Of a DNA stretch of 64,000 bases, positions 14,843 through 63,346 are shown piece after piece (within the stretch, counting starts at the first letter, position 1; each line of letters begins with the position of its first letter). The notes beneath the pieces are model-generated. The model had not been told where the DNA came from. It saw only the letters and a list, made by a program, of their open reading frames with translations, and searched no databases. The position numbers and the translations under genes were made by a program. The stretch covers positions 62,001 through 126,000 of the IMG/VR virus record IMGVR_UViG_3300042889_001272; one strand, written 5' to 3'.

Positions 14843-18241
<3,399 letters not shown>

Positions 18242-25493: not shown

Positions 25494-27320
25494 ATGCGTT
25501 TTAACGAATTAACAGAACAATCACAATTAGATGAATTTCAATTGAATCCGACTGGTGCATTAGCCAGCATTATTAGATGGGGTGCTGAAAATCCAGCCGT
25601 GCTGGCGGCATTGGGTATTGCAGCCGGCGGCGGCGCATTCGCATTAACAAGTGGTGCAGCCGCACTAGGTCCATTGATGGCTGCTGTTACTTCTATTAAT
25701 GCGGGACAAGGCGCATTAGGTTTACTTAGTCTAGATAAACTCAAAGATTTAATTCAACAAAATCCCAGTCAGGCAGAAGGTTACATTAAAAAGTTAATTT
25801 ACAAATATGTAGGTGATCAATCAGACGTTGAAGAATTTGAAAAACTACACGCACAAACTGCTTATAAAGGTGAAACAGAATTCCGATGGAGAGCAGAAAA
25901 TTGGCCAGTAACAATGGACAAGAATGCCGCCGAAAGTTATTTAGAAAAGAATGACAAATATTGGTTGGATACTTACAATCAACCGCAAGGTGTGGCGGAA
26001 GGCGGCAGCGATTACGAAGAGTTACAGGACAAAATAGAGTGGTTAATGGGTGCGCCAAATTATCTAAAATCTGACGAGGCCAGAGAAACAGCAGCCTATA
26101 CACCAGATACTGATTCTGTCTGGGCCGGTTATCGTGATGACCAATTGACTAAGAAAAATGAATCAGTAACCGAAGCAAAGAGCTTACATAAGCGTGTTAA
26201 AATCGTCAAAGGACCGTATGCCGGAAAGTACGGCTGGATCCGCGAAATCAAACATGGCGCCTACAAAGGTGCGCCAAAAACATATTATGTCGATGTTGAA
26301 GGCGGTGGACAAGCTAACAACTTATCATCAAGTGAGTTGCGTTTGGCAAAAGAGCAAAATGTAACTGAATCCCAAGAAGATATGACTCCGAATTGGGCCA
26401 AGTATGTACTGGATCAAATTTACAACAGTGATGGCGCAGTCACACTGACTGACCTGTTTGACGAAGGTATCCCGGGCTTGCACGACATGTTCATGGCAAC
26501 TGCTAAAGCACATGGCCTTGATCCAGAAGAAGAATTTGAAGATGTTCAACATGAACTAACTGTAGAATTAGAAGATATCATCAAAGGTGGCCATGGATTG
26601 GACGAAGGCTATTACGATCTTAACAGTGATCTTCCAGGAATGGAACCAATTGACTTTTCATCTAATCCAAGTTTTAAAGATCTTATTACTCGTTATACAC
26701 AACTTGTATATCAAGGTCATGCCAGTGAAACAAGCCCAGAAGAAGATCAAGAACACGACGAGATCGAACAGTATGTTGCCAAACGTTTCGGTGAAAAAGG
26801 TTCTGCACATTTACAAAAAGCAGGCGAAGTTAGTTATTGGGGTCGAGATGACGGTAAAGGTAGCGGACACATTCGTTCCAGCAACTTAGGTCGTCCAAAT
26901 CAACCAGGTGGTAATTTCCGCACAACAAAATCAGGCAAGATGCACGGTCAAGATGTTAAAATGATGAAGAACAAAGTTGCAGATAGATTAGGTCGTCATC
27001 CTGAACCATCATTACCAGAAGGTAGATATGATAACCGCGATGCTTATCAACGTGATTATGACAACAGTGTAGCAGGTATGGGCAAGCGCCAATCTTATGC
27101 TTATAGTCAAGACGGCGGTGCCAACGATGAAGGATGGAACAATTATAAAGAACCAGAACCTAAGCGTAAAATTTACTCTTTGCAAATCAACGGAAAAACA
27201 TGGACACAGGATGGCAATACTGTTACGTTCTTTACACGAGAACGTGCAGAATCTGCAAAAAATTCTATACTGAACAAGCGTCCAGAAACAAAAATTGTAG
27301 TAATGGTACAAGAAGTTTAA
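25494..27320 (+). CDS. Modular putative internal head polyprotein
   Basis: Starts MRFNELTE (ATG 25494); modules joined by QGVAEG, ESVTEA, QNVTES, LDEG, LPEG. Confidence 0.7.
   Translation: MRFNELTEQSQLDEFQLNPTGALASIIRWGAENPAVLAALGIAAGGGAFALTSGAAALGPLMAAVTSINAGQGALGLLSLDKLKDLIQQNPSQAEGYIKKLIYKYVGDQSDVEEFEKLHAQTAYKGETEFRWRAENWPVTMDKNAAESYLEKNDKYWLDTYNQPQGVAEGGSDYEELQDKIEWLMGAPNYLKSDEARETAAYTPDTDSVWAGYRDDQLTKKNESVTEAKSLHKRVKIVKGPYAGKYGWIREIKHGAYKGAPKTYYVDVEGGGQANNLSSSELRLAKEQNVTESQEDMTPNWAKYVLDQIYNSDGAVTLTDLFDEGIPGLHDMFMATAKAHGLDPEEEFEDVQHELTVELEDIIKGGHGLDEGYYDLNSDLPGMEPIDFSSNPSFKDLITRYTQLVYQGHASETSPEEDQEHDEIEQYVAKRFGEKGSAHLQKAGEVSYWGRDDGKGSGHIRSSNLGRPNQPGGNFRTTKSGKMHGQDVKMMKNKVADRLGRHPEPSLPEGRYDNRDAYQRDYDNSVAGMGKRQSYAYSQDGGANDEGWNNYKEPEPKRKIYSLQINGKTWTQDGNTVTFFTRERAESAKNSILNKRPETKIVVMVQEV
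25986..26003 (+). repeat. GVAEG junction repeat, copy 1
   Basis: CAAGGTGTGGCGGAAGGC. Confidence 0.9.
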
Positions 27321-34375: not shown

Positions 34376-35520
34376 GATTATTGGAACTAAAAGAATTAAT
34401 GGAAGCAGTGGATCCCAAGCTGGGTCGTGCTTTTAATCACTTAGAGGATCTTGTATTCTTCTATGGTAGTGCTGGTACTATTGAAGCATTGGAACATTTA
34501 AAAGATATGAACACAGAACAAGGTAGTTCGAGTGTTCGTATGAAGTGGGACGGCAATCCTCAAATTTACTGGGGTCGTGAGCGTGGTGTATTTGTTCCTC
34601 CGCATGGTCATAATCAGTGGAGTCGAAAAGCAATGCCTGCTAATCCAACGGATGTATCAGACTTTATTATGTCTAGTGGTAAAGCGGTTACTCCGGAAGA
34701 AGTCAGTGCGAGACAACAGTTTGCAGATAAGTTTGCCAGTTTAGCACCATTATTTGAACCAGGCACTCCTGCAGACTTGGATGGCAACAGCACATTCTAT
34801 GTCTATGCTGATGCACTATTCTTATCACCACCCGAGTTAAAGGACGGAGTTTATAGTTTCAATCCTAATCCAAAAAGTCAAACAACATATCATGTGCGAG
34901 CAGACAGTGATCTAGGACGTAGAATTGCAGGTGCAGAAGTTATGGTTGTTGGCCATGCTTACTTTACTGAACACGGCGCACCTGATTCAGCACAAATTCC
35001 TATCAAAGACTTTACAATGTTTAATGCTAATCCAAAACTAATTGTCCTGGGTCCAATATATAATGTAGCACCAGTTAAAGTTGATAATACAATGATTCAA
35101 CAAGTAGAGAATCATATCAAGCAACATGCAAATCAAGTTGATACATTCCTACAAAGTGTTGCAGGTTTAAGTGACTTAAAACAAATCATTTATAACTATG
35201 TAAATCAAAGTGCTAAGGCAAAACAATTAGATAGTTTAAGTGCTAATCACTTCTTCCAATGGATGACTTCAAAAGTCAGTGCTCCGAAACAAGCAAAGAT
35301 CAAAGAATTAAATTCTGCACAGGGCAATGTATTAGAAGAGATATTTAAAATTGTTCGTGCTATACAAATATTAAAAGACAATGTCATTGACCAAATTGAG
35401 TCAGGACCTCGAGCAGATATCTGGGACACCAACGGCGAAGGTCGTGTGCGTTATGCAGATGGAAATAAACAATTCGGCAACGTGAAGTTTGTACCGAGAA
35501 AGCGTTGGACACCACAATGA
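34372..35520 (+). CDS. Ligase-like nucleotidyltransferase (KxDG motif)
   Basis: MRLLELKE start; NHLEDL, VRMKWDGNP, GEGRV, VKFVPR. Confidence 0.55.
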   Translation: MRLLELKELMEAVDPKLGRAFNHLEDLVFFYGSAGTIEALEHLKDMNTEQGSSSVRMKWDGNPQIYWGRERGVFVPPHGHNQWSRKAMPANPTDVSDFIMSSGKAVTPEEVSARQQFADKFASLAPLFEPGTPADLDGNSTFYVYADALFLSPPELKDGVYSFNPNPKSQTTYHVRADSDLGRRIAGAEVMVVGHAYFTEHGAPDSAQIPIKDFTMFNANPKLIVLGPIYNVAPVKVDNTMIQQVENHIKQHANQVDTFLQSVAGLSDLKQIIYNYVNQSAKAKQLDSLSANHFFQWMTSKVSAPKQAKIKELNSAQGNVLEEIFKIVRAIQILKDNVIDQIESGPRADIWDTNGEGRVRYADGNKQFGNVKFVPRKRWTPQ

Positions 35521-35923: not shown

Positions 35924-38482
35924 ATGAAAATAAATCAAGTATTAGTAGAATCAGCAAGCGCAACAGTGGCGTTTGCTTTTGGCAGATTTAATCCTGCACA
36001 TCAAGGACATATTGAAGTATGGCGCACAGTGGAACAAGCTGGCGCAAATTGGTTCATTGGAACCAATGCCACTACCATTGGTCCTAATGATCCACTTACA
36101 TTCCAACAAAAATCTGCTTGGATGGAAGAAATTTATCCTCCTATCTCTGGACATATTGTTCCTGAACAAAGCGTATTGACATTGGCAGCTTACATCTTTA
36201 AGAAGACACGTAAGAATGAACGTGCCACGGTAGCTTATATTACTGATGAAACCGATTGGGCTTGGAGTGGTAAGTTATTAAATCAATACAATGGTGTCGA
36301 AGGTGTTCACGGTTATTACAAGTTTGCACAGATTATTCATGAGCCAAGCCCACGTGTAAGTAGTGCCACAGCATTACGTGATGCGGCTCGTGCCGATGAC
36401 AAGGTTGCGTTCTATCATGCCAGTGGAACTGATCCTAAATCAAAGGTCGCTGGACTAACATACTTTGACACAGTTAAACAAGCAGTTGAGAAATATCCAT
36501 TGCCAGTTAAACGTGGACAAAAAGTTAAAGAGCCTATTGTGGCGGAAGGCTCGGACGATGTTGCTAGTGCTACACCAGCAAAAAACGAACGCGGAAGATT
36601 CACGGCGTGGGATGATGATGAACCGATGCGTTTGAAATGTGAAGATGGTGAGTTTAGAACCATACAAGAAATCAATATGCTTAGACAGAAAATAGGAATG
36701 AAACCTTTTTCTATCAAAAGTCAGCAAGGTGTGGCGGAAGGTAACTTAAACGAATTTGCACCTGGTGCTGGCGATGAAGGTGGCGGCGAAGATCCATACA
36801 AGTACCCCAAGCCAGAGCGGTATCGTCGTAGTGTAGATTTCTTTGGTCAGTTTGAAGCAGATCATTTTGATCGTGAAGACATGGATGACGCCAAGGGCGA
36901 GTTCAAAGGCTATTGGGGCAAAGATCAAATTGCCTATTTTAAATTTGATAACCCCAAGCGCACAGGCAGCGATGACCCGGGCATGGGCTGGTACTATGAA
37001 CCCCAGTTGAGCGGTCATGGTGATAATACCAGTGTGACACCTGCTGTTGATAATACCGAACAACGCAAGCAACAAGAATTAAGCATGATTCGTGCGTTTT
37101 TAAAATCTGGCAATCGACCAAATCCAGACAGTCAAATTTATAATTTAATGAAACGACATGGTATAGCGGAAAGCGACGAAGATCGTATAGCATACAAATT
37201 ACAATGGCCCGAACTTGTCAACAAAGTTAACAGTGCAATGAGGGCCATGGGTTGGAAAGGCCAACGTAAAGACGATGGTTCTTTTATGTTCATCACTAAA
37301 GGCCAACTCGACGATGAGTTTTACATTGTTATTATAGACAACAAAGGCAATGACATGTTTACCTATGCATTAGGCACAGTCGAAGAAGGTTCCCCACATA
37401 TCGGCGAACAAGATACATTGCCCAATACAGAAGCTAGCATAAGTGAATTGATGAATTCTATTAGGGAAGGATTTGGATTAAATGAAAATGCTGAACAACC
37501 TAATAATCCATATGGTTACAAAGTAGGTCAAACAGTCAAACTACATAACAAGCTACAGGGTCGTGTAATTGATATTTTCGATGACAGTATCGAAGTATTA
37601 TTAACTGACGGGCGCACTGTTACGGTGAACTTCCGTGACGCTGAAGTTCTAGGAGAGCACAGTGTAGCCGAAGCAGAACAACAAACTGTGGCCAAGACCT
37701 GGGATCAAATGACAAGTCAAGAGAAACTAAGTGGTGTTAAAGGTCGCACAGTATGGAATGAAAAAACACAGAGATATTACACAGTGTTTGATGTTCCAAT
37801 AAAACAGCCCACAGACGAAGCAAGTTTAGCAACTATGCGTGATTACTTTGCTGGTGATCAAAATGCTCAAGATCCTACTACGCTGGCAAAACAACGTACT
37901 TGGTTTGATAAAACTAAAGATAAAAACGGGCGTGCCATTGTAGATAAAAGATTTAGAAGTCCAGAAGAATTTCGACTATGGTTAAAACAAAACAAATTAA
38001 AACAAATTTCCGGCGTTAAAGAAGATGAAGAGCAGGGAGAAGTTGAACAACAAGGACAACTTATTCCATGGCCGGCAGGTACTGCTAAAGTTCATGTCAG
38101 CGATGTATACGATTGGTATAAGCTAGGACAAGTTATCAGTGATTTAGATGATGCTAATCCTGAAGCATTTGGACAAGGTGCTCCGCAGACAGTTATTGCT
38201 TTTGGCAGCGAAGAAGAAGAAAGCAAACTAATGCCAATGTTAAAGCGTTTAGGTCTGCGTATAGATGATATAGATCCTGCGGGCGCCGAATTAGATGAAG
38301 CATATCACGCAGGAGAACTTTATGAATACTTAAAGAAAGTTCATGGCAAGTGGGCATTAGTAAGTAAAAGCAATCCAAAGAAAGTATTACAATACTATCG
38401 TGGCGGAGATGAAAAACCCAGTGATGAATGGGTTAATAAAGTAGAACGTCGTGTACATAGCTTTGAAAGTAAAAAGAAATGA
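35924..38482 (+). CDS. Cytidylyltransferase-like (HxGH) enzyme fused to multiple small modules
   Basis: Starts MKINQVLVE (ATG 35924); FGRFNPAHQGH, RVSSATALR; C-terminal modules joined by IVAEG, QGVAEG, HGIAES, HSVAEA, LDEA. Confidence 0.7.
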   Translation: MKINQVLVESASATVAFAFGRFNPAHQGHIEVWRTVEQAGANWFIGTNATTIGPNDPLTFQQKSAWMEEIYPPISGHIVPEQSVLTLAAYIFKKTRKNERATVAYITDETDWAWSGKLLNQYNGVEGVHGYYKFAQIIHEPSPRVSSATALRDAARADDKVAFYHASGTDPKSKVAGLTYFDTVKQAVEKYPLPVKRGQKVKEPIVAEGSDDVASATPAKNERGRFTAWDDDEPMRLKCEDGEFRTIQEINMLRQKIGMKPFSIKSQQGVAEGNLNEFAPGAGDEGGGEDPYKYPKPERYRRSVDFFGQFEADHFDREDMDDAKGEFKGYWGKDQIAYFKFDNPKRTGSDDPGMGWYYEPQLSGHGDNTSVTPAVDNTEQRKQQELSMIRAFLKSGNRPNPDSQIYNLMKRHGIAESDEDRIAYKLQWPELVNKVNSAMRAMGWKGQRKDDGSFMFITKGQLDDEFYIVIIDNKGNDMFTYALGTVEEGSPHIGEQDTLPNTEASISELMNSIREGFGLNENAEQPNNPYGYKVGQTVKLHNKLQGRVIDIFDDSIEVLLTDGRTVTVNFRDAEVLGEHSVAEAEQQTVAKTWDQMTSQEKLSGVKGRTVWNEKTQRYYTVFDVPIKQPTDEASLATMRDYFAGDQNAQDPTTLAKQRTWFDKTKDKNGRAIVDKRFRSPEEFRLWLKQNKLKQISGVKEDEEQGEVEQQGQLIPWPAGTAKVHVSDVYDWYKLGQVISDLDDANPEAFGQGAPQTVIAFGSEEEESKLMPMLKRLGLRIDDIDPAGAELDEAYHAGELYEYLKKVHGKWALVSKSNPKKVLQYYRGGDEKPSDEWVNKVERRVHSFESKKK
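36538..36550 (+). repeat. GVAEG junction repeat, copy 2
   Basis: TGTGGCGGAAGGC. Confidence 0.85.
36719..36742 (+). repeat. GVAEG junction repeat, copy 3
   Basis: AGTCAGCAAGGTGTGGCGGAAGG; 23 nt identical to 44407-44429. Confidence 0.9.
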
Positions 38483-38736
38483 GATCCGTAAATCAAAGTT
38501 ATACAACTATTGATATCATTGTCGATGAATTTGACGAACAAATTATTGATATGTTAAAACAACGGTATCCTGCTTTATCTATTGCAAGAGTAAATGCTAC
38601 TAGATTTAACAAAGATTCTACTAACTTGTTAAAGTTTTATCTATATCATTGGATATTTGATAACTATGAATCTGCTATCGTTGACATTAATAATTATTAC
38701 AATAAATATACTATTAGCACGAAAGTCGTAGCATGA
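38479..38736 (+). CDS. AT-rich hypothetical protein
   Basis: Coupled ORF lacking the shared N-terminal tag. Confidence 0.45.
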   Translation: MRSVNQSYTTIDIIVDEFDEQIIDMLKQRYPALSIARVNATRFNKDSTNLLKFYLYHWIFDNYESAIVDINNYYNKYTISTKVVA

Positions 38737-40949
38737 AATATCTAGAACTAAAAGAACAACTACTCAACGAAATTAATATGAGCCCCAGTGCTTTACGCCG
38801 TGCTGCCAAAGACATTGGTGCTAAGGCAGGCATGGAATTTGAAATGATTGTTCCCGGTGCTGCCGAAAGCGAAGAAGGTGATGACTATCAAGAACCAGAC
38901 TACGACAGTGATGAAAGCATTCGCAGTATTCAAGATGCCTATGATTTCTTCTACGATGGTGATTTTAATAGCCGTAGAGATGCAGAGCGCCTACGTGATC
39001 AAATGACAGACAACTACACTGATTGGCTGGGCACTCAATCTGGGGATCGCTGGGAATCTGATAAAGAAGAAATGATATATGATTGGCTGCGCTACAATGC
39101 CGCGCCCAGCGATGTATTTGGTATACTAGAAGTAGCTGCCAGCGCCAGCGGAGATTATCCTGATCCCTCTAAAGAAGATTACAGAAATGCTGCCGCCAAA
39201 GTAGCTGAAGATAGAATAGATCCATGGTATGACGATGCTTATCAAGATTTTACTGACAATTTCTACAGAGATGCAGACATGGAAAGTGAATGGCTCGAAC
39301 ATGAAGCTATAGAAAGTATGGTCGACGTTGAACAGAATTATAACATTGTTTGGCCACATTATCATAATCCGGATAACTCAGGCGGTGATGTTAGTATACA
39401 AGATGCCGCAGACAGTTTCAGTAATGCCATTGGTAAAGAAGTACAGGCCAGCGACAATTATCACAGTCGTAGTATAACAAGACCCAGTGCCACAGAATTA
39501 CACTATGTTGTGGAACCTGACGGTAGCTTAGAAGCAGATGAACCCGGAGATGGCGGTTTAGAATTTGTCAGTCCAGCATTGCCCATAGATGAATTATTAG
39601 ATGACTTGAAAAAAGTTAAAGCATGGGCAGATAAGTTTGGCTGTTATACAAATGACAGCACAGGTTTGCACATCAACGTCAGTGTTCCAAAATGGCAAGG
39701 TGATTTGCAAAATCTAGACTATGTTAAACTTGCTATTTTAATGGGCGACGAATATGTTTTAGAAAACTTTGGACGCAGTGGTAATACCTATGCCAAAAGC
39801 GCACTAAAGATTGTTAAAGATAATATCACACAGCGTCCAGAAGATGTCAAACGTTTGTTAGACACTATGAAAGAGCACTTAAACACCAGCGCCGCAAAAT
39901 TAATACACAGTGGCGCCACTAGTAAATACACCAGCGTTAATACCAAAGATGGTTACATTGAATTCCGTAGTCCAGGTGGTGATTGGTTAAACAGTAACTT
40001 TGATAAGATTGAATCTACATTATTACGTTTTGTTGTAGCCATGGATGCTGCCGCAGACGAAACAAAATACAAAGAAGAATACGCCAAGAAACTTTATAAG
40101 TTATTAGCAGGCAATGACAAAGATACTACAAATACCATGGTTTACTTTGCCAAATATGCCGCAGGTGAATTGCCTCAGAGCGCATTAAAGAGTTTTATTA
40201 AACAAGCACAGTTTGAACGTAAGGCAGGCAAAGAACCCAATGGTAAAAAAATGTGGTATCGTGTTGACAAAGAAGGACGTGGTAAGAGTGGTGCAAGCAT
40301 TGAAGTTGTTGCTAGATCAAAAGAAGAGGCATTAGAAAAAGCAGCCAGTAATTGGAGTTTAAAGCTAAGTGCATTAACTGCGGCCGCTGTTTATCCAGTT
40401 CGCCCCTATGAAGAGCAACGCTACGAAATATTTAATTTAAACACAAACAATAGCGTAGAAGATGCTGAAGGTATTACTAATGATAGAGATGCATTAGTGC
40501 GTTTGCAGGATTACATTGAACATGGTCCTCACGGATTACAACGTGGACAAGCAACAGATATGTTTGGCATAAGACGAGTTGGCGGAGATGGCGAACCTAT
40601 ACAACCAAATCCAATTCGTGCTACTGTAGGCGCTCCACAACCTGCTGGTAGTGTTGGACAATCAACTCCTAGACCTATTCCCGGTGTTATTGATATTGAG
40701 CCTGATATAGAACAGAACTTTACACCTGTACCAGGTAGCACAACAAACTTACAGCAACAACGTGCAACACCCGGCACGTTTACAGGTGCTTGGAAAGTAA
40801 TGAATGTCGACACTGGACAAGAATTATATAGATTCAGCGGCATTGGTAATTCGCAGTCAGATGCTAATGGTGTCGCTTTACAATGGATAAGACAACATGC
40901 CCCGAACACAGACTTGGTACAAATTGAAGTTGTGCCCATAATGAGCTAA
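38733..40949 (+). CDS. Putative amidoligase (COOH-NH2 ligase type 2) with C-terminal modules
   Basis: MKYLELKE start; GMEFE, VEPDGSL, GLEFVSP, STGLHINVS, IEFRSPGG. Confidence 0.7.
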   Translation: MKYLELKEQLLNEINMSPSALRRAAKDIGAKAGMEFEMIVPGAAESEEGDDYQEPDYDSDESIRSIQDAYDFFYDGDFNSRRDAERLRDQMTDNYTDWLGTQSGDRWESDKEEMIYDWLRYNAAPSDVFGILEVAASASGDYPDPSKEDYRNAAAKVAEDRIDPWYDDAYQDFTDNFYRDADMESEWLEHEAIESMVDVEQNYNIVWPHYHNPDNSGGDVSIQDAADSFSNAIGKEVQASDNYHSRSITRPSATELHYVVEPDGSLEADEPGDGGLEFVSPALPIDELLDDLKKVKAWADKFGCYTNDSTGLHINVSVPKWQGDLQNLDYVKLAILMGDEYVLENFGRSGNTYAKSALKIVKDNITQRPEDVKRLLDTMKEHLNTSAAKLIHSGATSKYTSVNTKDGYIEFRSPGGDWLNSNFDKIESTLLRFVVAMDAAADETKYKEEYAKKLYKLLAGNDKDTTNTMVYFAKYAAGELPQSALKSFIKQAQFERKAGKEPNGKKMWYRVDKEGRGKSGASIEVVARSKEEALEKAASNWSLKLSALTAAAVYPVRPYEEQRYEIFNLNTNNSVEDAEGITNDRDALVRLQDYIEHGPHGLQRGQATDMFGIRRVGGDGEPIQPNPIRATVGAPQPAGSVGQSTPRPIPGVIDIEPDIEQNFTPVPGSTTNLQQQRATPGTFTGAWKVMNVDTGQELYRFSGIGNSQSDANGVALQWIRQHAPNTDLVQIEVVPIMS

Positions 40950-40950
40950 T

Positions 40951-42030
40951 ATGAGACTACTAGAATTAAAAGAAGATAAATCATACCAACCTACTAGCAT
41001 TGATGTAGGTGACGAAGTACTTGTGGGTAAGTTTAAAAATCGCAGAGCAGAAGTTAAAGGGTTTACCACTGATGATAATAATCAGCCTGTGCTAAAAACT
41101 TCCAAAGGTGATCAACATTTATTCAAGCCACGCATTGCTAAACTTATGCCCAACGAGGTTAATGAAGATTCCGGTAACAGCCTTCAAACTATTATTCAAT
41201 CCTTTGTCAATAGTCCTTTAGGACAAAAATATAAACAATACGATTGTAAAACTGTAACCAGAGCATTTGTACAATGGACAGAACAAAATAAGATTTCAAC
41301 GCAGGTAGTTTCATTGGCTCCTCCCAGTGCTGATTTTATTGCAAAGAATCCAAGATATAAAGGCAAGAGTGGACAGGGCGATGGACACATTATGCCTATA
41401 GTAAATGGCAATGCCATTGACTTCACTGTTAGACAATTTGGTGTTAGTAGACCTTTTAACAATCCACTAGTAACGCCAACCAATAGTCTGCCAGCAGTAT
41501 ACGGCAAATTCGGATATTTTACAGACAAGCCTGAATGGTTTTTAGGAGGCAAGTCCCATTGGATTGGTGCATTGAACGCAATACCAAAAGAAATCTTTAA
41601 TCAAAATTTTGGCGATGAAATGTTAGAGCATACTATGACAGAAAACTTTGCCGATGGTCGAGTAAAAGGTAAGAGTAGTCCTGGACGTGTTAAGCGTAGT
41701 GGCGCAAGCTGTGACGGAAGTGTCTCTGATCTAAGATCAAAAGCAAAAGATGCCAGTAGTGAACGTGCTAAAATGTATCACTGGTGTGCTAACATGAAAA
41801 ACGGCCGTGCTAAAAACGAATCAGAAATGTTAGAAGATTTAAACGTTATATGGAAAGATGTATTAGAAGCAGGTGTATATAAAGGTTATCCTTGTACCAA
41901 AGACTGTAGCGGACATGCCGCAGGCGATCGTTGGGCAGATGCTAGAGATATAACAGATCCCAACGAGTGCCCTTACAGTAACAACAGTTTCTGGGAAGGC
42001 TGTCTAGCGCATACCGATGAACAAGAATAA
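40951..42030 (+). CDS. Modular putative internal head polyprotein
   Basis: MRLLELKE start; modules separated by VNED, MTENF, MLED, VLEA. Confidence 0.65.
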   Translation: MRLLELKEDKSYQPTSIDVGDEVLVGKFKNRRAEVKGFTTDDNNQPVLKTSKGDQHLFKPRIAKLMPNEVNEDSGNSLQTIIQSFVNSPLGQKYKQYDCKTVTRAFVQWTEQNKISTQVVSLAPPSADFIAKNPRYKGKSGQGDGHIMPIVNGNAIDFTVRQFGVSRPFNNPLVTPTNSLPAVYGKFGYFTDKPEWFLGGKSHWIGALNAIPKEIFNQNFGDEMLEHTMTENFADGRVKGKSSPGRVKRSGASCDGSVSDLRSKAKDASSERAKMYHWCANMKNGRAKNESEMLEDLNVIWKDVLEAGVYKGYPCTKDCSGHAAGDRWADARDITDPNECPYSNNSFWEGCLAHTDEQE

Positions 42031-42047
42031 CGAATAAATATACTATT

Positions 42048-43403
42048 ATGCGATTACTAGACCTTAAACTAACAGAAGCGGCACTTAGTGCAGGCGAACT
42101 AACAAAATACTTTGACTCTGAAACAGAGCCGACAAAGTGGAAACGTCTTAACGTTTTCTTAAACAAAGTCCTACAAAAAGAACCATTCGAATTAGTAGAT
42201 GGCAGCACAGCATTAGTTAATACATCTGAATACAAACGTATAGCAGATATTTTTAATTTAGGAACTGTGCCAAGTAATTTTAAAGTTGACACAGATAAAG
42301 GCCCAATGGGTTTAAGTAAGTTTTTTAAATCAGCAGAACTGGGAGGCAAGGGTGCTGGCGGCGCCGGTTTGTCTAACAAAGGTGAAGTCAGTGAGGGTAT
42401 TCTAGGTGCTAGTTTATTTGCTAAACTTATAGCAAGGACTCGTGGTAAGATTGATATTATCAGTGGTAATGACATTTGGAACGTCATTGACATGTTAAAT
42501 CAAACACAGGAAGATCATTACGGTGTTAAAGTTAAAGATGCTAGTAAATCTGCTGTTAATGATAGTATTCAATATACATTAAAGTTAAAGCCAGGACCAT
42601 ATGCAGACTTAATGGACGAAGCAAAACGAGCATTGTTAAGTGATGTAACTAACAGCGCAGTAGCATATGCTAATAGTGCAGATGCTCAAGCATACTGTGA
42701 ATATTTTTACTTAAATGGTAAGCCGGATATTATTCATGTTATTACAGACGGTATCAGCGGAAGCACTACTAAGAAATCTGACATTGAAGTTGTTGTCACA
42801 GATCCAAAAACTGGTAAAACTACACATCAACAACTTAACATTAGTCTTAAAGCAGGCAGTGACCAAATGGGTCAAGTCGGTCAAGGTGATGTTGGCGAAG
42901 AATTTGATGCTCAGAAGAAACTATGGAACTCTTTTGGCATTGACATCGAATCAAGCAGAGCTGAATTTAATAAAGTATTAGAGAAAAAAGGTTTAATAGC
43001 AGCCATAGAATCTATCTATCGTGATGCTGCCACATTCCTTCAAGACTTGTTAGCAGGCAGTTTTGATGATGCCGAATACTTGTTTTTAAAAGACTTGGTA
43101 AAAGGCATTGACTATTTTGCTACATTAAACGATCCCTCAGTTATTTTAGTTAGTTTAGAGCGCGGAACTTATGAAGTTATGAGCTTTGCTAACTTAGAAA
43201 AACAATTAAATAACATTGATTTAGACGCTAGTTATAACGAAAACTCTGCTACTCCTCAGATAGAAATATTTGATAAAAATAGTGGCAGTCAGTTATTTAG
43301 AATAAGAACAAAACGTGAAACTAAAAAGGGCGGTGGCATTTATGTCCGTAATTACATTGAAAAAGGTCCTTTGTTAAAACAGTTGACCAGCATCAAGAAG
43401 TAA
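42048..43403 (+). CDS. Possible PD-(D/E)xK nuclease-fold protein
   Basis: MRLLDLKLTE start; SEGILG...KSDIEV...NISLKAG spacing; TAAATA at 42035. Confidence 0.45.
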   Translation: MRLLDLKLTEAALSAGELTKYFDSETEPTKWKRLNVFLNKVLQKEPFELVDGSTALVNTSEYKRIADIFNLGTVPSNFKVDTDKGPMGLSKFFKSAELGGKGAGGAGLSNKGEVSEGILGASLFAKLIARTRGKIDIISGNDIWNVIDMLNQTQEDHYGVKVKDASKSAVNDSIQYTLKLKPGPYADLMDEAKRALLSDVTNSAVAYANSADAQAYCEYFYLNGKPDIIHVITDGISGSTTKKSDIEVVVTDPKTGKTTHQQLNISLKAGSDQMGQVGQGDVGEEFDAQKKLWNSFGIDIESSRAEFNKVLEKKGLIAAIESIYRDAATFLQDLLAGSFDDAEYLFLKDLVKGIDYFATLNDPSVILVSLERGTYEVMSFANLEKQLNNIDLDASYNENSATPQIEIFDKNSGSQLFRIRTKRETKKGGGIYVRNYIEKGPLLKQLTSIKK

Positions 43404-43439
43404 TACGTTATATTGACATAAATTGGCATAAATAAACAT

Positions 43440-43649
43440 ATGAAAATAAAAGAACTTATCAGCGAAGACGGCAGCGCAGGCGGTATTAGCAGTGGCGCTA
43501 TAGCTTCTGCTCCAGCCAGCAATTTGTTTGCTGTACCTATGAAACGCAATATGGCAATGACTCGCAAGCGACCTAAAAAGGAAGCTGAAGAATTTAAAAC
43601 TAAAAAAGATAAGTCTAATGTTTTAGAAAATGGAACTAACAATGGATAA
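43440..43649 (+). CDS. Small putative internal head protein
   Basis: MKIKELISE start; TAAATA at 43429. Confidence 0.65.
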   Translation: MKIKELISEDGSAGGISSGAIASAPASNLFAVPMKRNMAMTRKRPKKEAEEFKTKKDKSNVLENGTNNG

Positions 43650-45024
43650 GCAAAGAGCCAGACAGCTTTATGAACTAGCAGATCGTTTAAGCAAGCTAGA
43701 CATTAATTCGCTGTCAGAACAACAATTAGAACAACGTAATACAATGATTTCTAAGTTGCAAGAAGAAGTTAAAACAATTAAAGAGTTTGCTCCTGACGAT
43801 GGCGACGATGGCGCAGGTGGCGAAGAAGATACATTACACAAATATGCCCGTATGTGGTATAATGGCAATGAAACTACACAACAACAAGTTGAAAAAATAT
43901 TAGACCGTATGGGTTGGGAAATTGGCGAATTAGAATCAGAAGAAGGTGGCGCTTTTGTTGTACAATCAGGTGACGAAAATGGTAATAGTTATATTGGCTT
44001 TGCAGTCGCTGACTTGTTAGAAGGTATTACTGATAATAAAGACGCTGGCGAATATGATCAAGAAGGCGATATGGCTCGTCAAGATCTTGCCACTGCCGCT
44101 AATGCCGCAGAAGAATTACGCAGTATTTTAGACAGCGATGAGAACTTGCCAGAATGGGTTCAATCAAAGATTACTAAAGCAGTTGACTATTTAGATACTG
44201 TTCGTGATTATATGAAAAGTAAAGATCAAGATGTAACAGAAGCTTCACAGCGAGTTGATTCACTGGTCACTGACGCATTAAAAATAATGCGTGGTTCATC
44301 AATGAATGATGCTGTTCAAGCATTAAAGACTGTGCTTGGTGATAGAGAATACAATGGCCGACGCAATCATTACAATTTCTATGTTAGACAAATCATGGAT
44401 ATGTATAGTCAGCAAGGTGTGGCGGAAGGCGTTGAGGAATCCAATGTAAAGATTTTACAAAAGTTGCTTGCAGACGAAGGTTACACTTATCCAATTGGAA
44501 TACTAAGTCGAAGATTAAAACTTCTTTCCACAAATCAATCAAAAGTGCTTGCGAGATTGTTTGTGAATGCTCAAAGGGCACAAGATGAAGAATTAAAACT
44601 TGAATTGATTGATAAAATTGATGGTGTAATTTCCAGGGAAGCAGAGAGAAGAAGCGATCCATGGAAAGGTGTGGCGGAAGGCGTTGCAGAAACTTTGTCA
44701 ATGGACGAAGCCAAAAAAGTGCTACGTCATTATGGTGCTGATAATTTCAAAACAACCAGCAACGAATTGCATTTTTATAAAAACGGCCGCCCATTCAGTG
44801 TTGACTTGATCATGAACGATGATGCAACTCGCAGTGTAAGTCTAAGCCAGTTAAATTCAGCTACTCGTAGATTAAAAGGCCAAGGTGTGACTGAAACTAA
44901 AAAGACAAGCCCAAAACTCACGCCAGTTAATATCAAAAAAACTGACCCAGTCAGTGAAGAAATAAATACAGAAGCATACGAAAGACTACAAAAGGTTTTC
45001 GCATTTAAGAATTATGAAAGTTAA
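43630..45024 (+). CDS. Modular polyprotein with GVAEG junctions
   Basis: Junctions IKEFAP, LLEG, QDVTEA, QGVAEG, KGVAEG, QGVTET; start 43630 or 43642. Confidence 0.7.
   Translation: MELTMDKQRARQLYELADRLSKLDINSLSEQQLEQRNTMISKLQEEVKTIKEFAPDDGDDGAGGEEDTLHKYARMWYNGNETTQQQVEKILDRMGWEIGELESEEGGAFVVQSGDENGNSYIGFAVADLLEGITDNKDAGEYDQEGDMARQDLATAANAAEELRSILDSDENLPEWVQSKITKAVDYLDTVRDYMKSKDQDVTEASQRVDSLVTDALKIMRGSSMNDAVQALKTVLGDREYNGRRNHYNFYVRQIMDMYSQQGVAEGVEESNVKILQKLLADEGYTYPIGILSRRLKLLSTNQSKVLARLFVNAQRAQDEELKLELIDKIDGVISREAERRSDPWKGVAEGVAETLSMDEAKKVLRHYGADNFKTTSNELHFYKNGRPFSVDLIMNDDATRSVSLSQLNSATRRLKGQGVTETKKTSPKLTPVNIKKTDPVSEEINTEAYERLQKVFAFKNYES
44407..44434 (+). repeat. GVAEG junction repeat, copy 4
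   Basis: AGTCAGCAAGGTGTGGCGGAAGGCGTTG. Confidence 0.9.
44666..44686 (+). repeat. GVAEG junction repeat, copy 5
   Basis: AAGGTGTGGCGGAAGGCGTTG; 21 nt identical to 44414-44434, 252 nt apart. Confidence 0.9.
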
Positions 45025-45026
45025 TT

Positions 45027-46433
45027 ATGAAACTATTTGAACTATATCAACAAAATACCCTACAAGGTACTAATAACTTAAAACAGATCTCAGAAGCTGT
45101 GGCCAATAAGACTGGTGCAGTTATTACTGTAGGTAACACTCAAGTTAGACTTGGCATTAACAGTGCTAAGTACGTTCTTGGTTTATATGAAACCGCAGTT
45201 GCCAATGGCACCAGCGAACAATTCTTAGAAGGCCTGGCCAATCTAAATCCAACAATGGTCATGGAAAACGATAACACAATGCGTCACATTGTCAGCAAGT
45301 TCAAGCATGAAGTTAAAAACTTCTTAGCTGGTGATGATATGAGCGATGACTTATATCATGCATTGTATGACTACTACAGCGACCACGGTGAAATGCCATA
45401 TGGTATTGCTAAAGCTCGCGACGGTGATCCTTATGAATGGGTTCACATGAGATTCGATCGTGATGTACATGATTACGTTGGCGGCAACAATCCAGATGTT
45501 CCAGCATTACCACAAGCAAATATGTCAATGATGCCGCGTCAAGAAAGCATGTACGAAGCATCTACTATCAATGGTAAAGTACAAGACCCTAAAAGCCTAA
45601 CTTGGAAACAAACTAGTATGAGCTATGAAAAAGCTGTAGAAAAATACGGTAAAGACAAAGTCAGAAAAGAAGGTAAAAATCGTATAGGCAACGAAGTAAT
45701 TGCAGTACATGTTCCGCTAGAGGAAAGCAATATGTATGAATCTAAGAAAACAAAGATGAAAGAAGGATGGGATGAGATGATGGCCGCCGTTCGAGCCAGT
45801 GCTCAAGATGAAAAAAGTGCTACTGGTAAGTTTTCCAGATCAAAGAATCCTGACTCAGGCGGAACAGTTTATAGCCGCAAATATAATGCAGACACGGGTC
45901 AATCCATTGAGCCAACTAAAGATCCAGAAGGTAAATCTCCTATCAAGCGTAGTGTAGGTCGTCCTAATGCTGGAGTTACAGGCTCAGATGAAGCAGGAAC
46001 TAAATTTGGCGATTATTCAAGCTGGTATCATAAATCCAAACGCACACACGGCGATCGTAAAATTGTTGGCGGTAGAACTGGTGCTATGGCAGTTATTGAA
46101 AAAGGTAAAAAATATCTAGTAGTCGGTAAGTGGGAAAACGACGAAGGTGTTATGTTTGATAAACCCAGTGAATTGGTTACATTAGATGCATTGAAATCTT
46201 ACAAAAGCGGTAAAGGTCGTCCGAAGAAAGTTCGTGAATGGATTGAAACTCTGCGTTTTGTATCTGAGGGTGAAACAACTAAAACAGCAACTGGTATTAA
46301 ACATAGTGCTAAAGGCAAATATGGCGCCAGTGAGGAAGAAGAAAAAGAACCGGAAAGTCTAAACAAAAGTTTGACCAGCAAGTTAGATAAGAGTATGGGC
46401 ATTAAACACGATCACGGAAATAAAAAGAAATGA
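45027..46433 (+). CDS. Modular putative internal head polyprotein
   Basis: MKLFEL start; ISEA, VMEN, MYEA, LEES, MKEG, VSEG junction-like sites. Confidence 0.65.
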   Translation: MKLFELYQQNTLQGTNNLKQISEAVANKTGAVITVGNTQVRLGINSAKYVLGLYETAVANGTSEQFLEGLANLNPTMVMENDNTMRHIVSKFKHEVKNFLAGDDMSDDLYHALYDYYSDHGEMPYGIAKARDGDPYEWVHMRFDRDVHDYVGGNNPDVPALPQANMSMMPRQESMYEASTINGKVQDPKSLTWKQTSMSYEKAVEKYGKDKVRKEGKNRIGNEVIAVHVPLEESNMYESKKTKMKEGWDEMMAAVRASAQDEKSATGKFSRSKNPDSGGTVYSRKYNADTGQSIEPTKDPEGKSPIKRSVGRPNAGVTGSDEAGTKFGDYSSWYHKSKRTHGDRKIVGGRTGAMAVIEKGKKYLVVGKWENDEGVMFDKPSELVTLDALKSYKSGKGRPKKVREWIETLRFVSEGETTKTATGIKHSAKGKYGASEEEEKEPESLNKSLTSKLDKSMGIKHDHGNKKK

Positions 46434-46810
46434 AAATTGCTGAAATTCTTAGTGAGATGAAATGTTGGCCTGGACATCGAAAAGTCGGCACACAACCTGG
46501 CACAGGTAAGAATAAAGGCAAGCGTGTCAACGACTGCGAAAAGATCAAAGAAGAATTAGATGACGATCAAAAGCGTGTAGGACAAGTCGGTGCAAAAGAA
46601 AAAGCAAAAAAGATTGGAACAGTATTAGGCACAGCTCCTAAGCAACATTCATTTAAAGGTCGATTAGTAGGTGAGTCTGAAATAAAAGAAGTTGCTCCTC
46701 CTGGTATGGAAGACTGGATCAAAGATCGTAAAGCAGACTTCAAAAAGCGTTATGGCGATAAGTGGGAAGAACGTTTATACGCCACTGCTTGGAAACAGCA
46801 TAATAAGTAA
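46430..46810 (+). CDS. Small modular putative internal head protein
   Basis: MKIAEILSE start; IKEE, IKEVAPPG junctions. Confidence 0.65.
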   Translation: MKIAEILSEMKCWPGHRKVGTQPGTGKNKGKRVNDCEKIKEELDDDQKRVGQVGAKEKAKKIGTVLGTAPKQHSFKGRLVGESEIKEVAPPGMEDWIKDRKADFKKRYGDKWEERLYATAWKQHNK

Positions 46811-47221
46811 ATGACACATTGGCAAGAATACATTCGCAGTAGTTATGAATTGATTCTTGACGCAGAGGGTAAGACTGCTACTTACTTAAACGAACCGTTA
46901 GAATACTATCTAGTTAACTTAATGGCCAAGTGGTTTGACAAACCTAATATTCCTCCCGATACTCCTGTGGCAATACTAATGCTCACTGCCATGCAAAATC
47001 CTAGAAAAGAAAACTTATCGGAAGTGGCAGATATTTGTTTATTCTACGACAGCTTTAAAATAAAACAACGCAAATGGCCTACGCTTAAATACTACAAAGA
47101 CATGGGTACTACGGCATACGGAATGGCTTATGTTGCTAGCAATGATAATGTATACAGTCAACTAGAAAACAGCTTTGATATGTGTAGTAGGATTTTATCT
47201 AATACTATTAAACAAGTCTAA
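46811..47221 (+). CDS. Hypothetical protein
   Basis: ORF. Confidence 0.65.
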   Translation: MTHWQEYIRSSYELILDAEGKTATYLNEPLEYYLVNLMAKWFDKPNIPPDTPVAILMLTAMQNPRKENLSEVADICLFYDSFKIKQRKWPTLKYYKDMGTTAYGMAYVASNDNVYSQLENSFDMCSRILSNTIKQV

Positions 47222-47308
47222 CTATAGTATGAGTCAATTTTATATAAAAAACTTTAAGTATTTAAGTATTAGTCAATAGAACTAAATATACTTATAGGAT
47301 AACATATC

Positions 47309-47749
47309 ATGGATGAATTAGTACAATCAATGAAAAAGGCACTGGCAGATACATTTGCCTTTTATTTAAAAGCACACGGCTTTCACTGGAACGTAGAAGG
47401 TCGCACATTCTGTCAAGACCACCAAATGTTTAGTAACATCTACGAAGAAGTATACGGCAGCATCGATCAATTCGCAGAAGAAATTCGTGCTATGGATGCT
47501 TATGCTCCGGCAAGTTTTGTTCGCTTCAGTGAACTAACTAGTATCGAAGACGAAGTTAAAATTCTTAATGCCCAGGGTATGTTCGAGAAATTACTAGCAG
47601 ATAACTCCGTTGTATTAGCCAGTGTTGAACAAGCATACGCATTAGCTGAAGCAGCCGGTAATCATGGATTGAGCAACTTCTTAGCAGAGCGCCAAGATGC
47701 ACATGCCAAACATGGTTGGATGTTGAGATCTACACTAAAACAAAGATAA
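47309..47749 (+). CDS. dps: Dps / DNA-binding ferritin-like protein
   Basis: YLKAHGFHWNVEG, DHQMF..IYEE, DQFAEEIRA, KHGWMLRS; TAAATA at 47283. Confidence 0.92.
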   Translation: MDELVQSMKKALADTFAFYLKAHGFHWNVEGRTFCQDHQMFSNIYEEVYGSIDQFAEEIRAMDAYAPASFVRFSELTSIEDEVKILNAQGMFEKLLADNSVVLASVEQAYALAEAAGNHGLSNFLAERQDAHAKHGWMLRSTLKQR

Positions 47750-47995
47750 ATGAATCCTACAATCAAAGAGTTAGTTCGGACTGAGCTAACTAAAAATCAA
47801 ATCCTTGCCCTTGAGTCTTTTATTTCAGATCGGGGCGAGGAAATTTTCAAAAACAGCAATCTACTCAAAGTCATTAACCGCAGTGACTTTGATGCTGTGC
47901 CCAACGAATTGGCAAAATGGGTCGTAGACAATGGAAAACGTTGTCCCGAACTTGCCGAACTTCGTGAAAAAGAAATATCCTTGTTTACCAAATAA
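47750..47995 (+). CDS. Truncated GH24 lysozyme-like protein (C-terminal lobe only)
   Basis: LTKNQILALESF..DRG...FKNSNLLKVIN..DFDAVPNELAKWV..NGKRCPEL..LREKE..LF parallels the lysozyme C-lobe; catalytic N-lobe absent. Confidence 0.55.
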   Translation: MNPTIKELVRTELTKNQILALESFISDRGEEIFKNSNLLKVINRSDFDAVPNELAKWVVDNGKRCPELAELREKEISLFTK

Positions 47996-47998
47996 CAC

Positions 47999-48027
47999 TT
48001 GACTGATGATGCGTGATACTATATAAT
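47999..48027 (+). promoter_or_regulatory. sigma70-type promoter
   Basis: TTGACT (47999) - 17 nt - TATAAT (48022). Confidence 0.8.
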
Positions 48028-48056
48028 AGTATAACACATTTTATTAAGGAGTGTTT

Positions 48057-48314
48057 ATGGAACCGCGTATGTTTTCTGGCGATGAGAAAGCCAAAATTAA
48101 AAAACTATTTGCTGAAGGCATTCAAGTCTTGAGTGAAGTTAATGCACTCAACGAAGGACTAACTGAAACTATCAAAGCCATTGCTGAAGAACTTGATATG
48201 AAACCCAGTGTACTTAAAAAAGCATTGCGTATCGCTTACAAAAATGAGTTTGCAAAAGAACAAGATGCATTCACTGAAGTAGAAGAAGTATTGCAAGTAG
48301 CAGGCCATCTTTGA
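48057..48314 (+). CDS. dsDNA-binding protein (T4 DsbA/GapR-like)
   Basis: AAGGAG SD; LNEGLTETIKAIAEELDMKPSVLKKALRIAYK helical pattern. Confidence 0.55.
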   Translation: MEPRMFSGDEKAKIKKLFAEGIQVLSEVNALNEGLTETIKAIAEELDMKPSVLKKALRIAYKNEFAKEQDAFTEVEEVLQVAGHL

Positions 48315-48598
48315 TCAAATTCCTAAAAGAACAAACGTGGCAGTTCTGGTTTGAATGGATTGCCACAGCTATATTAATAATTGGTGTTTACCAATCTTCT
48401 TTTAATATATTTCCATCTTACTTATGGTTTTCTTTTGTAGGAAACTTGTGTTGGATGGTGCTAGGAATTGTTTGGAAAAAATGGAGTTTGTTTGTTGTTG
48501 AATTGATCATTGTTGGTATATACTTTGTAGGATTAGTAAATGAATACTTAAAGGACGAAGTAGAAATGATTATGGCATTGATTAGGACTGTAATATGA
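48311..48598 (+). CDS. Small membrane protein (PnuC-like half?)
   Basis: TTG start; three hydrophobic helices, GNLCWMVLG..WKKWSL. Confidence 0.45.
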   Translation: MIKFLKEQTWQFWFEWIATAILIIGVYQSSFNIFPSYLWFSFVGNLCWMVLGIVWKKWSLFVVELIIVGIYFVGLVNEYLKDEVEMIMALIRTVI

Positions 48599-62994: not shown

Positions 62995-63346
62995 TCCAGG
63001 TTACGGTGCTATTCCACCTGGGCCACCTGGGCCACCTGGGCCACCTGGGCCGCAAGGATTAAGCGGACAGATTCTAACTGCTAATGGTATGAATGGTAGT
63101 AATTGGTCGCCGCAACATACTAATGCTGTTCAAATTGGTAGTCCTGATCCTGTTATTACATTTAAATTAGACGGTGACATCGTAACCAAAGCAGGAACTA
63201 TTACAGCAGATGATTGGATTTCTGTTATCAAAGTTATGAAACAGTTGATCATGGATATGAGCCAAGATGAGGAATTAGTATCTAAATATCCATATATACG
63301 AGATGCGGCACATATATGGATGATTAACAAACTTAAAGGAGAATAA
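62981..63346 (+). CDS. Hypothetical protein with short (PPG)n tract
   Basis: IPPGPPGPPGPPGPQG. Confidence 0.6.
   Translation: MATSNPGYGAIPPGPPGPPGPPGPQGLSGQILTANGMNGSNWSPQHTNAVQIGSPDPVITFKLDGDIVTKAGTITADDWISVIKVMKQLIMDMSQDEELVSKYPYIRDAAHIWMINKLKGE
63014..63051 (+). repeat. Perfect 9-nt tandem repeat
   Basis: (CCACCTGGG)x4 plus CC. Confidence 0.95.

What the first reader, a model, noticed from the sequence alone, without database searches (positions are those of the whole stretch)
44414..44686. 84-codon module bracketed by a perfect 21-bp direct repeat
Seen: AAGGTGTGGCGGAAGGCGTTG at 44414 and 44666, 252 nt apart (a multiple of 3), flanking a helical module (EESNVKILQKLL...RRSDPW). Recombination between the copies would delete it cleanly and keep the frame. 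Inference: this is the clearest, possibly most recent, cassette insertion with duplication of the junction.
Basis: partly seen in the sequence, partly recalled or inferred. Interest (0 to 1): 0.7.

Follow-up and report, generated by a model that had tools for sequence, protein, structure and literature searches.

The report
Swappable protein module between conserved linkers
The 21-bp repeat is two copies of a short in-frame linker that giant lake phages place between interchangeable small protein domains; the 84-codon piece is one such domain, recently slotted in, and the linker looks like both a recombination joint and a capsid-protease cutting site.

Summary
A perfect 21-mer lies at 44414 and 44666, 252 nt apart, in frame in one gene (43630-45024, 464 aa) of a T4-superfamily jumbo phage from lake water.

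The repeat was not made by the insertion. It is a family-wide inter-module linker, peptide (Q/K)GVAEG with core CAAGGTGTGGCGGAAGGC:
- It also sits in two other genes of this genome.
- It occurs in at least 120 IMG/VR stretches, almost always in frame, between about 80 unrelated flanking modules.
- It uses rare codons. A synonymous control made from common codons was found only 12 times.

The cassette reading holds:
- A syntenic orthologue (L090) lacks exactly these 252 nt.
- The closest relatives lack 468 nt (this module and the next).
- Another contig (L089) carries the module at 179/180 nt identity, then diverges completely inside the linker.

All six module boundaries read [V/I/L]-x-E. Glu is near-invariant at that position (189 E against 3 D). 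All six fall in low-confidence stretches of the structure model. The genome encodes a T4 gp21-type prohead protease, whose known motif is L/I-X-E.

Best reading: a mosaic, probably capsid-processed polyprotein whose linkers double as recombination joints. Cleavage is inferred, not shown. The module's own function is unknown.

The parts
43630..45024 (+). Host gene (P0001, 464 aa): a string of seven modules, N1-M2-M3-M4-M5-M6-C
   Evidence: ORF and translation. 1258 homologues in a mosaic family. The AF2 model shows domains on a string, pTM 0.31.
43630..43785 (+). N1 (aa 1-52): conserved helical N-terminal module ending I-K-E, possibly a propeptide
   Evidence: Shared by 58 of 121 relatives. Alignment ends cluster at aa 48-50. 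pLDDT dips at aa 54-63.
43786..44022 (+). M2 (aa 53-131), ends L-L-E
   Evidence: Found in 50 relatives. Boundary cluster at aa 135. pLDDT below 50 at aa 115-142.
44023..44241 (+). M3 (aa 132-204), ends V-T-E; the most widespread module
   Evidence: Found in 100 relatives. Matches phrog_32745. Also present in hypothetical proteins of T4-like cyanophages.
44242..44427 (+). M4 (aa 205-266), ends with the left linker SQQGVAE
   Evidence: Found in 94 relatives. 38 alignments end at aa 266.
44414..44434 (+). Left copy of the 21-bp repeat (linker, core 44413-44430)
   Evidence: Shares 23 nt with the copy in gene 35924-38482 (family D7).
44428..44679 (+).
   Evidence: Absent from the 120 best homologues. 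A search of 1.84 billion representatives gave only 3 hits. The model has four main helices, pLDDT 77. Missing as exactly 252 nt in L090. 179/180 nt identical in L089.
44666..44686 (+). Right copy of the 21-bp repeat (linker, core 44665-44682)
   Evidence: The homology with L089 ends inside it, right after GAAG.
44680..44895 (+). M6 (aa 351-422): alpha/beta module ending GQGVTE
   Evidence: Aligns over residues 1-71 in most of the 18 relatives that carry it, at different positions, and twice in three of them. pLDDT about 95.
44896..45024 (+). C (aa 423-464 plus stop): conserved C-terminal module
   Evidence: Shared by 58 relatives. 27 alignments start at aa 418.
25986..26002 (+). Third copy of the linker core, in frame (PQGVAEG) in gene 25494-27320
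36725..36741 (+). Fourth copy of the linker core, in frame (QQGVAEG) in gene 35924-38482. The module before it (36545-36741) occurs in the orthologue of P0001 in L090.
   Evidence: 92% nt identity over 197 nt, ending at the linker.

Best explanation
The gene encodes a mosaic beads-on-a-string protein of a jumbo T4-superfamily phage. It is made of small, independently folding modules (about 50-85 aa). Each module is followed by a short linker of the form G-[V/I/M]-[A/T/S]-E-[G/A/T]. The 84-codon piece (M5) is one such module. It entered between M4 and M6 by recombination within linkers, so a canonical linker now lies on each side; that is the 21-bp direct repeat.

The linker has two roles. At the DNA level it is an 18-20 nt patch of identity shared by otherwise unrelated modules, in several genes and many phage genomes, and crossovers there swap, insert or delete whole modules without breaking the frame. 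This role is supported by two breakpoints that end at or inside a linker core (L089, L090) and by 33 of 34 in-frame spacings. At the protein level it matches the L/I-X-E site of the T4 gp21-type prohead protease that this genome encodes. The protein is therefore probably taken into the prohead and cut into separate small proteins, like T4 internal proteins, giving a rapidly reshuffled set of packaged and perhaps injected factors. This second role is inferred.

What M5 itself does is unknown.
For: Cassette status:
- One exact 252-nt gap in the syntenic orthologue L090.
- The closest relatives, and a contig in lake run X3, lack 468 nt, which is M5 plus M6.
- L089 is 179/180 nt identical up to the linker and unrelated after it.
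- M6 recurs as a discrete unit in 18 proteins.
- A module of gene 35924-38482 sits in the L090 orthologue at 92% nt and ends at the linker.

Linker as a DNA element:
- All four genomic copies use the same codons. The chance of that for one instance is 7e-4 from genome codon usage.
- In 53 non-redundant linkers, GGT is used 51/53, GTG 40/51, GCG 39/53 and GGC 26/29 times, against backgrounds of 0.48, 0.18, 0.08 and 0.34 (Fisher 1e-13 to 1e-28 for the first three; GGC not tested).
- The exact 18-mer occurs in at least 120 IMG/VR stretches, 100 of 101 in frame, with flanks falling into 78-79 unrelated clusters.
- A synonymous control made from the most frequent codons occurs in only 12 stretches.
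- 33 of 34 spacings between copies are multiples of 3.

Protease-site reading:
- All six boundaries are [V/I/L]-x-E.
- Alignment ends lie within 3 aa of such a motif in 46% of cases, against 19% at random.
- Glu is preferred over Asp 189:3, although the two are equally common overall. In T4, Asp at that position blocks processing (PMC9026906).
- Peptidase_S77 scores 85 bits and a gp23-type capsid gene is present.
- The T4 motif is L/I-X-E.
- All six junctions fall in low-pLDDT stretches.
Against: - No cleavage data exist. [V/I/L]-x-E is a short, common motif.
- P0001 lacks the T4-like N-terminal targeting signature (MK..E..) that twelve neighbouring genes have.
- The gene lies about 115 kb from the head-gene cluster.
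- A protease-linker co-fold gave no answer.
- No 252-nt deletion joint was seen in four lake metagenomes, but only contigs were available, not reads.
- Conservation at the nucleotide level is stronger than recombination by short homology alone easily explains.
Confidence: 0.6

Rival explanations
1. The modules are exchangeable cassettes and the linkers are recombination joints, as above. But the protein is not cleaved. It works as one multi-domain 'polyvalent' protein, and the linker peptide is only a conserved exposed connector.
For: There is no direct evidence of cleavage. Polyvalent phage proteins with many shuffled domains are known, and some are packaged uncut (PMC5512222). P0001 has no CTS-like start.
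Against: A plain connector would tolerate Asp, yet Glu outnumbers Asp 189:3. The residue three before the cut is always V/I/M/L. A gp21-type protease is encoded.
Confidence: 0.22
2. A dedicated DNA-level system: a sequence-specific nuclease or recombinase recognises the 18-bp core and drives in-frame cassette capture and loss, working like an integron or shufflon for protein domains.
For: Nucleotide identity is very strong and uses rare codons. Conservation falls to background immediately outside the core. Homology breaks off exactly inside the core.
Against: The core has no dyad symmetry (read from the sequence). No recombinase was looked for or found next to the loci. Drifted linkers (GVTET and others) are common and use ordinary codons. 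No excision joints appear in the metagenome contigs.
Confidence: 0.1
3. The nucleotide conservation serves translation or RNA: rare GTG-GCG codons and Shine-Dalgarno-like AAGGTG/GGAAGG would pause ribosomes between domains to help folding.
For: Rare codons and purine-rich SD-like strings sit exactly at domain boundaries.
Against: This does not explain the exact breakpoints or the presence and absence of modules. Many working linkers use common codons. It could coexist with the main reading.
Confidence: 0.05
4. Trivial origins: an assembly chimera at a repeat, a tandem domain duplication, or a target-site duplication of a mobile element.
For: A direct repeat flanks an insert.
Against: Independent assemblies are identical across both copies. 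M5 is unrelated to M4 and M6 apart from the linker. M5 encodes only an 84-aa helical domain. The 'duplicated' sequence exists as single copies at more than 100 other sites.
Confidence: 0.03

Closest known systems
T4 internal proteins (IPI-III, Alt) with capsid targeting sequence, processed by prohead protease gp21
   Same: Small, diverse, non-essential proteins are carried in the head. They are cut after Glu in L/I-X-E. The conserved short coding sequence has been proposed as an evolutionary device for bringing new proteins into capsids (PMC9026906). This genome has the same protease and capsid families. Twelve neighbouring genes start with MK/MR..E..-type peptides that resemble the T4 CTS (CTS sequence in PMC8442874).
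   Different: Here many cargo modules are strung in one reading frame and separated by internal sites, so it is a polyprotein rather than one CTS per gene. The site is conserved as DNA with rare codons. P0001 itself has no CTS-like start. Cleavage is untested.
Polyvalent proteins of phages and conjugative elements (Iyer et al. 2017, PMC5512222)
   Same: They are multi-domain, extensively mosaic proteins thought to be packaged and delivered with the DNA, and some are proteolytically processed.
   Different: Those proteins are defined by recognisable conflict domains (MPTase, ART, ParB and others). None was detected here (Pfam). No conserved inter-domain linker is described for them: the word 'linker' has 0 occurrences in that paper.
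Conserved-motif recombination in T-even tail-fibre adhesins (gp38 glycine-rich motifs, gp37 motifs)
   Same: Variable segments are separated by short conserved motifs. Exchanges occur within or near these motifs and give chimeras (PMC3157838).
   Different: The gp38 motifs form part of one folded core and keep a fixed order. Here the units are whole independent domains that change in number, order and host gene.
Multiply cleaved head and ejection proteins of phiKZ-like giant phages (201phi2-1, phiKZ, SPN3US)
   Same: Many head proteins are cut after Glu at short motifs, often at several sites per protein (PMC9026906; PMC5694885).
   Different: The motif there is S/A-X-E, the phage lineage is different, and there is no report of shuffled cassettes or of a nucleotide-conserved site.
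Integron cassettes and shufflons (own knowledge)
   Same: Discrete units are bounded by a short repeated DNA site and are gained, lost and reordered.
   Different: Those units are whole genes or 3' gene ends moved by a dedicated recombinase at sites with inverted-repeat structure. Neither feature is seen here.

Membership tests
Substrate of a T4 gp21-type (Peptidase_S77) prohead protease | The genome encodes the protease | tested here: met
   PF03420 scores 85.1 bits, E 5e-25, at G000 223773-224405, between the portal and the scaffold/gp23-type capsid genes.
Substrate of a T4 gp21-type (Peptidase_S77) prohead protease | An L/I-X-E motif at the cut sites, with Glu required | tested here: met
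   All six module boundaries are [V/I/L]-x-E. E outnumbers D 189:3. V and M are accepted here in addition to the L/I of T4.
Substrate of a T4 gp21-type (Peptidase_S77) prohead protease | The protein is actually cleaved and located in the capsid | not testable with these tools
   No proteomics is available and the co-fold gave no answer.
T4-like internal protein with N-terminal capsid targeting sequence | A ~10-residue N-terminal CTS (T4: MKTYQEFIAE) ending in the cleavage motif | tested here: not met
   P0001 starts MELTMDKQRAR. Twelve neighbouring genes do carry M[RK][LIF]x[ED][LIF] starts.
Polyvalent proteins (Iyer et al. 2017) | Several known conflict or effector domains in one polypeptide | tested here: not met
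   Pfam gives no family for P0001. PHROGs gives only one family of unknown function. Fold searches found nothing.
Target-site duplication of a mobile element | The repeat is created by the insertion, and the element carries its own mobility function | tested here: not met
   The same core pre-exists as single copies in at least 120 viral stretches and in two other genes. M5 is an 84-aa helical domain only.
Tandem repeat / duplicated domain | Adjacent units are homologous | tested here: not met
   M5 compared with M4 and M6 shares only the 5-6-residue linker.
Site-specific recombination cassette (integron/shufflon-like) | A recombinase plus a site with inverted-repeat core | tested here: inconclusive
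   The core shows no dyad symmetry (read from the sequence). No systematic search for an associated recombinase was made.

The most novel reading that the evidence does not exclude
The 18-bp core (CAAGGTGTGGCGGAAGGC) is a true DNA-level site of a domain-shuffling system in freshwater giant phages. It would be maintained because an enzyme or a recombination pathway acts on it, so that these phages assemble and re-assort in-frame polyproteins of small injected factors on demand. That would be an integron-like logic applied to protein domains, coupled to release of the domains by the capsid protease.
Probability: 0.12. Interest if true: 0.9.

Novelty: new variant of a known kind. Interest (0 to 1): 0.68.

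Why it matters
The result shows a simple and apparently undescribed way in which giant phages build and rebuild proteins. One short linker keeps the reading frame, offers a patch of DNA identity for swapping whole domains between genes and genomes, and probably marks where the capsid protease cuts the domains apart. The family is large: more than 1250 proteins, and about 80 distinct modules on each side of the exact core in one limited sample. If the modules are packaged or injected factors, this is a natural combinatorial library in a phage-host arms race. It also makes two questions testable: how phage hypothetical proteins diversify, and what gp21-type proteases accept as substrates. The linker gives a ready search key for cataloguing such modules in metagenomes.

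Tried and rejected
- Function of M5: Pfam and PHROGs, the ESM Atlas, and Foldseek against PDB, BFVD and AFDB clusters on the M5 and whole-protein models gave nothing above noise.
- Protease with linker peptide: the co-fold returned 'no answer' and is not evidence either way.
- A 252-nt deletion within the same population: four lake runs showed a 468-nt skip and many contig breaks at the linkers, but no 252-nt skip. Only Logan contigs were available, not raw reads.
- M5 in IMG/VR by back-translated patterns: this found only the same phage again.
- Per-codon conservation around M4: too few DNA loci, five distinct, so I used the peptide-defined linker codon test instead.
- A T4-type late promoter (TATAAATA) occurs once in the window, away from the gene. 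A TAAATATACT motif precedes three nearby genes but could not be tied to structural genes.
- Literature: a search for the peptide motif and the DUF names of neighbouring genes found nothing relevant.
- Rejected origins: assembly chimera, tandem duplication and target-site duplication (see rival explanations).
- The opposite-strand ORF 44393-44701 was given no weight. No test was run on it; it lies wholly inside the gene.

Full report
**Observation**

The 21-mer is present exactly at 44414-44434 and 44666-44686. A 3-mismatch search of the window finds only these two copies plus a partial copy at 25987, with none expected in 100 shuffles.
- Both copies lie in frame in one ORF, 43630-45024 on the + strand (464 aa, P0001).
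- The spacing is 252 nt, or 84 codons.
- The arrangement is not an assembly error. An IMG/VR contig from another sample is identical over the gene (L005). A contig from lake run X2 covers 44261-44762, including both copies, without a difference.

**Setting**

The window is bases 62001-126000 of a 235.6-kb IMG/VR virus record that is estimated 66% complete.
- The record encodes a family-B DNA polymerase, a Peptidase_S77 (T4 gp21-type) prohead protease, a scaffold and a gp23-type major capsid protein.
- The capsid protein is 64-68% identical to those of cultured jumbo phages such as PA5oct, Vibrio phage 2.275.O and Sinorhizobium phage Phosso.
- The sequence is held by lake-water metagenomes.

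**The repeat is a linker, not a by-product of insertion**

The 17-nt core CAAGGTGTGGCGGAAGG occurs four times in the whole record. All copies are on the + strand and in frame as (Q/K)GVAEG: twice in P0001, once in gene 25494-27320 and once in gene 35924-38482. These three proteins are otherwise not similar.

P0001 has 1258 database relatives. About half of the best 120 share its N-terminal and C-terminal modules, but between those ends they carry different numbers and orders of internal modules, with lengths of 255-538 aa. Local alignments to P0001 begin and end in tight clusters at residues 48-50, 135, 198-208, 266-271, 346-348 and 418-422. This defines seven modules: N1, M2, M3, M4, M5, M6 and C. 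Every boundary reads [V/I/L]-x-E:
- I-K-E
- L-L-E
- V-T-E
- V-A-E
- V-A-E
- V-T-E

M6 aligns over residues 1-71 in most of the 18 relatives that carry it, at different positions, and twice in three of them.

**The 84-codon module (M5) is a cassette**

- It is absent from all 120 best homologues.
- The closest relatives (92% and 87% aa; P0004 and P0006, loci L006-L010) go straight from the M4 linker to the C module, so they lack M5 and M6. A contig in lake run X3 shows the same 468-nt skip.
- L090 is a syntenic locus, 83-89% nt identical over window 41864-48388. It aligns with M4 and with M6 plus C, with a single gap of exactly 252 columns. Its one linker there (QQGVTEGVAE) uses different codons at 6 of 21 positions. 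That is more diverged than the flanks. This fits replacement by two canonical linkers in the window's lineage better than a recent deletion in L090.
- A search of 1.84 billion representative proteins with M5 alone found three proteins. Two have about 50% identical copies in other architectures. The third (P0125, contig L089) is 179/180 nt identical to window 44502-44681, up to and including the 16-nt linker core. It becomes unrelated at once afterwards and continues with modules known from other family members.
- In the lake metagenomes the depth over M4 and M6 is several times that over M5, and contigs break at the linkers. This is expected if M4 and M6 are shared by co-occurring phages and M5 is private to this one.
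- Exchange also crosses genes. A 197-nt module that lies in gene 35924-38482 of this phage, ending at its linker, lies in the P0001 orthologue of L090 at 92% identity.

**The linker is conserved as DNA**

- GTG and GCG supply only 14% and 7% of Val and Ala codons in this genome, yet all four copies use them. One instance would do so with probability 7e-4.
- In 53 non-redundant G[VI]AE[GAST] linkers from the window and related loci:

| Codon | Linker use | Background frequency |
|---|---|---|
| GGT | 51/53 | 0.48 |
| GTG | 40/51 | 0.18 |
| GCG | 39/53 | 0.08 |
| GGC (final) | 26/29 | 0.34 |

  Fisher tests on the first three give 1e-13 to 1e-28; GGC was not tested.
A synonymous 18-mer built from the most frequent codons is found in 12.
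- Of 101 copies examined, 100 read QGVAEG in open frames with a median length above 500 aa. Sequence information drops to background immediately outside the core. The 50 residues on either side fall into 78-79 unrelated clusters.
- Of 34 spacings between neighbouring copies, 33 are multiples of three, and many are 150-225 nt. A single module bracketed by two identical cores is therefore a common arrangement, not a peculiarity of this gene.

**The linker is also constrained as a peptide**

- In 121 family proteins, [QKR]G[VIM][ATSN]E occurs 189 times and the Asp version 3 times, although Glu and Asp are equally frequent overall.
- T4 gp21 cuts after Glu in L/I-X-E, and Asp at that position of the IPIII targeting sequence blocks processing (PMC9026906).
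- An AlphaFold model of P0001 has pTM 0.31. It shows confident separate domains and low-confidence stretches at all six junctions: residues 54-63, 115-142, 203-206, 261-293, 346-351 and 421-437.
- M5 modelled alone has four main helices at pLDDT 77, with poorly defined linkers.
- The capsid protein's N-terminal region carries the same kind of motif (L-L-E, V-M-E, V-L-E, I-M-E) ahead of the conserved core. Which of these sites is used is my inference.

**Interpretation**

Shown:
- M5 is an exchangeable cassette.
- The repeat is the family's standard linker.
- Homology breakpoints fall in the linker.
- The linker is conserved beyond what its peptide requires.

Inferred:
- Recombination between linkers moves the modules. 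The precedent is conserved-motif exchange in T-even adhesins (PMC3157838).
- The linkers are prohead-protease sites, so the product is a polyprotein cut into small head-internal, possibly injected, proteins like the T4 internal proteins.
- Twelve of fifteen genome-wide M[RK][LIF]x[ED][LIF] gene starts cluster at window 25.5-46.4 kb. A cyanophage protein carrying M3 starts MKTFKQLREE. Both resemble the T4 targeting sequence MKTYQEFIAE (PMC8442874). This supports a capsid-cargo neighbourhood, but P0001 itself lacks such a start.

Unknown: the function of M5 and of every other module.

**Novelty**

The ingredients are known: gp21 processing, internal proteins, polyvalent proteins and motif-mediated shuffling. 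I found no description of in-frame cassettes joined by a nucleotide-conserved protease-site linker. I file it as a new variant of a known kind.

Noticed in passing
window 25494, 27322, 33283, 34372, 35517, 35924, 38733, 40951, 42048, 43440, 45027, 46430 (+ strand gene starts): Twelve genes in a 21-kb stretch begin with M[RK][LIF]x[ED][LIF], for example MKINQVLVES, MKIAEILSEM and MRLLELKE. Most have [LIV]-x-E within the first 11 residues, like the T4 capsid targeting sequence. Only three other such starts exist in the 235-kb record, and one of them is a 70-aa gene between the portal and the protease. This may be a large cluster of capsid-cargo genes.
   Followed up: partly
window 36545-36741 and 45603-45715; L090 3204-3400 and 3591-3703: Modules that lie in two other genes of this phage (35924-38482 and 45027-46433) occur inside the P0001 orthologue of a related phage, at 92% and 76% nt identity. 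Cassette exchange therefore crosses gene boundaries.
   Followed up: partly
window 15979-16845 (ORF 14843-18241) and 63014-63058: Collagen-like G-X-Y coding repeats with a 9-nt period lie in a 1132-aa fibre-like protein. That protein shares segments with ORF 8518-9198 and with a 1442-aa protein at G000 228896-233224. A short run of CCACCTGGG repeats lies near the window's end.
   Followed up: no
window 38703, 42035, 47283: The exact motif TAAATATACT lies 13-30 nt upstream of three gene starts (38733, 42048, 47309). It may be a phage promoter. It could not be linked to the structural genes.
   Followed up: partly
window 35924-38482, 38733-40949, 34372-35520, 47309-47749: Neighbouring genes carry weak or clear enzyme-like parts: a cytidylyltransferase-like N-terminus with an HxGH motif, fused to linker-separated modules; Amidoligase_2; DUF6267; and a ferritin-like gene, named from the annotation of the syntenic L090.
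   Followed up: no
G000 145422-161100 and 179252-180652 (outside the window, - strand): A family of about eight paralogous ~400-aa proteins lies in tandem (20-33% identity), one of them a fused double copy.
   Followed up: no
window 44413-44430 and the other cores: Part of the core, GGTGTGGCGGAAGG, has four GG runs separated by 1-3 nt, which is the formal pattern of a two-layer G-quadruplex. Linkers ending in Ala lose the fourth run, so this may mean nothing.
   Followed up: no
P0057, P0081, P0084 (relatives): Some family members carry two copies of the M6 module, 71-80% identical to the window's M6. Module duplication therefore occurs as well as exchange.
   Followed up: no
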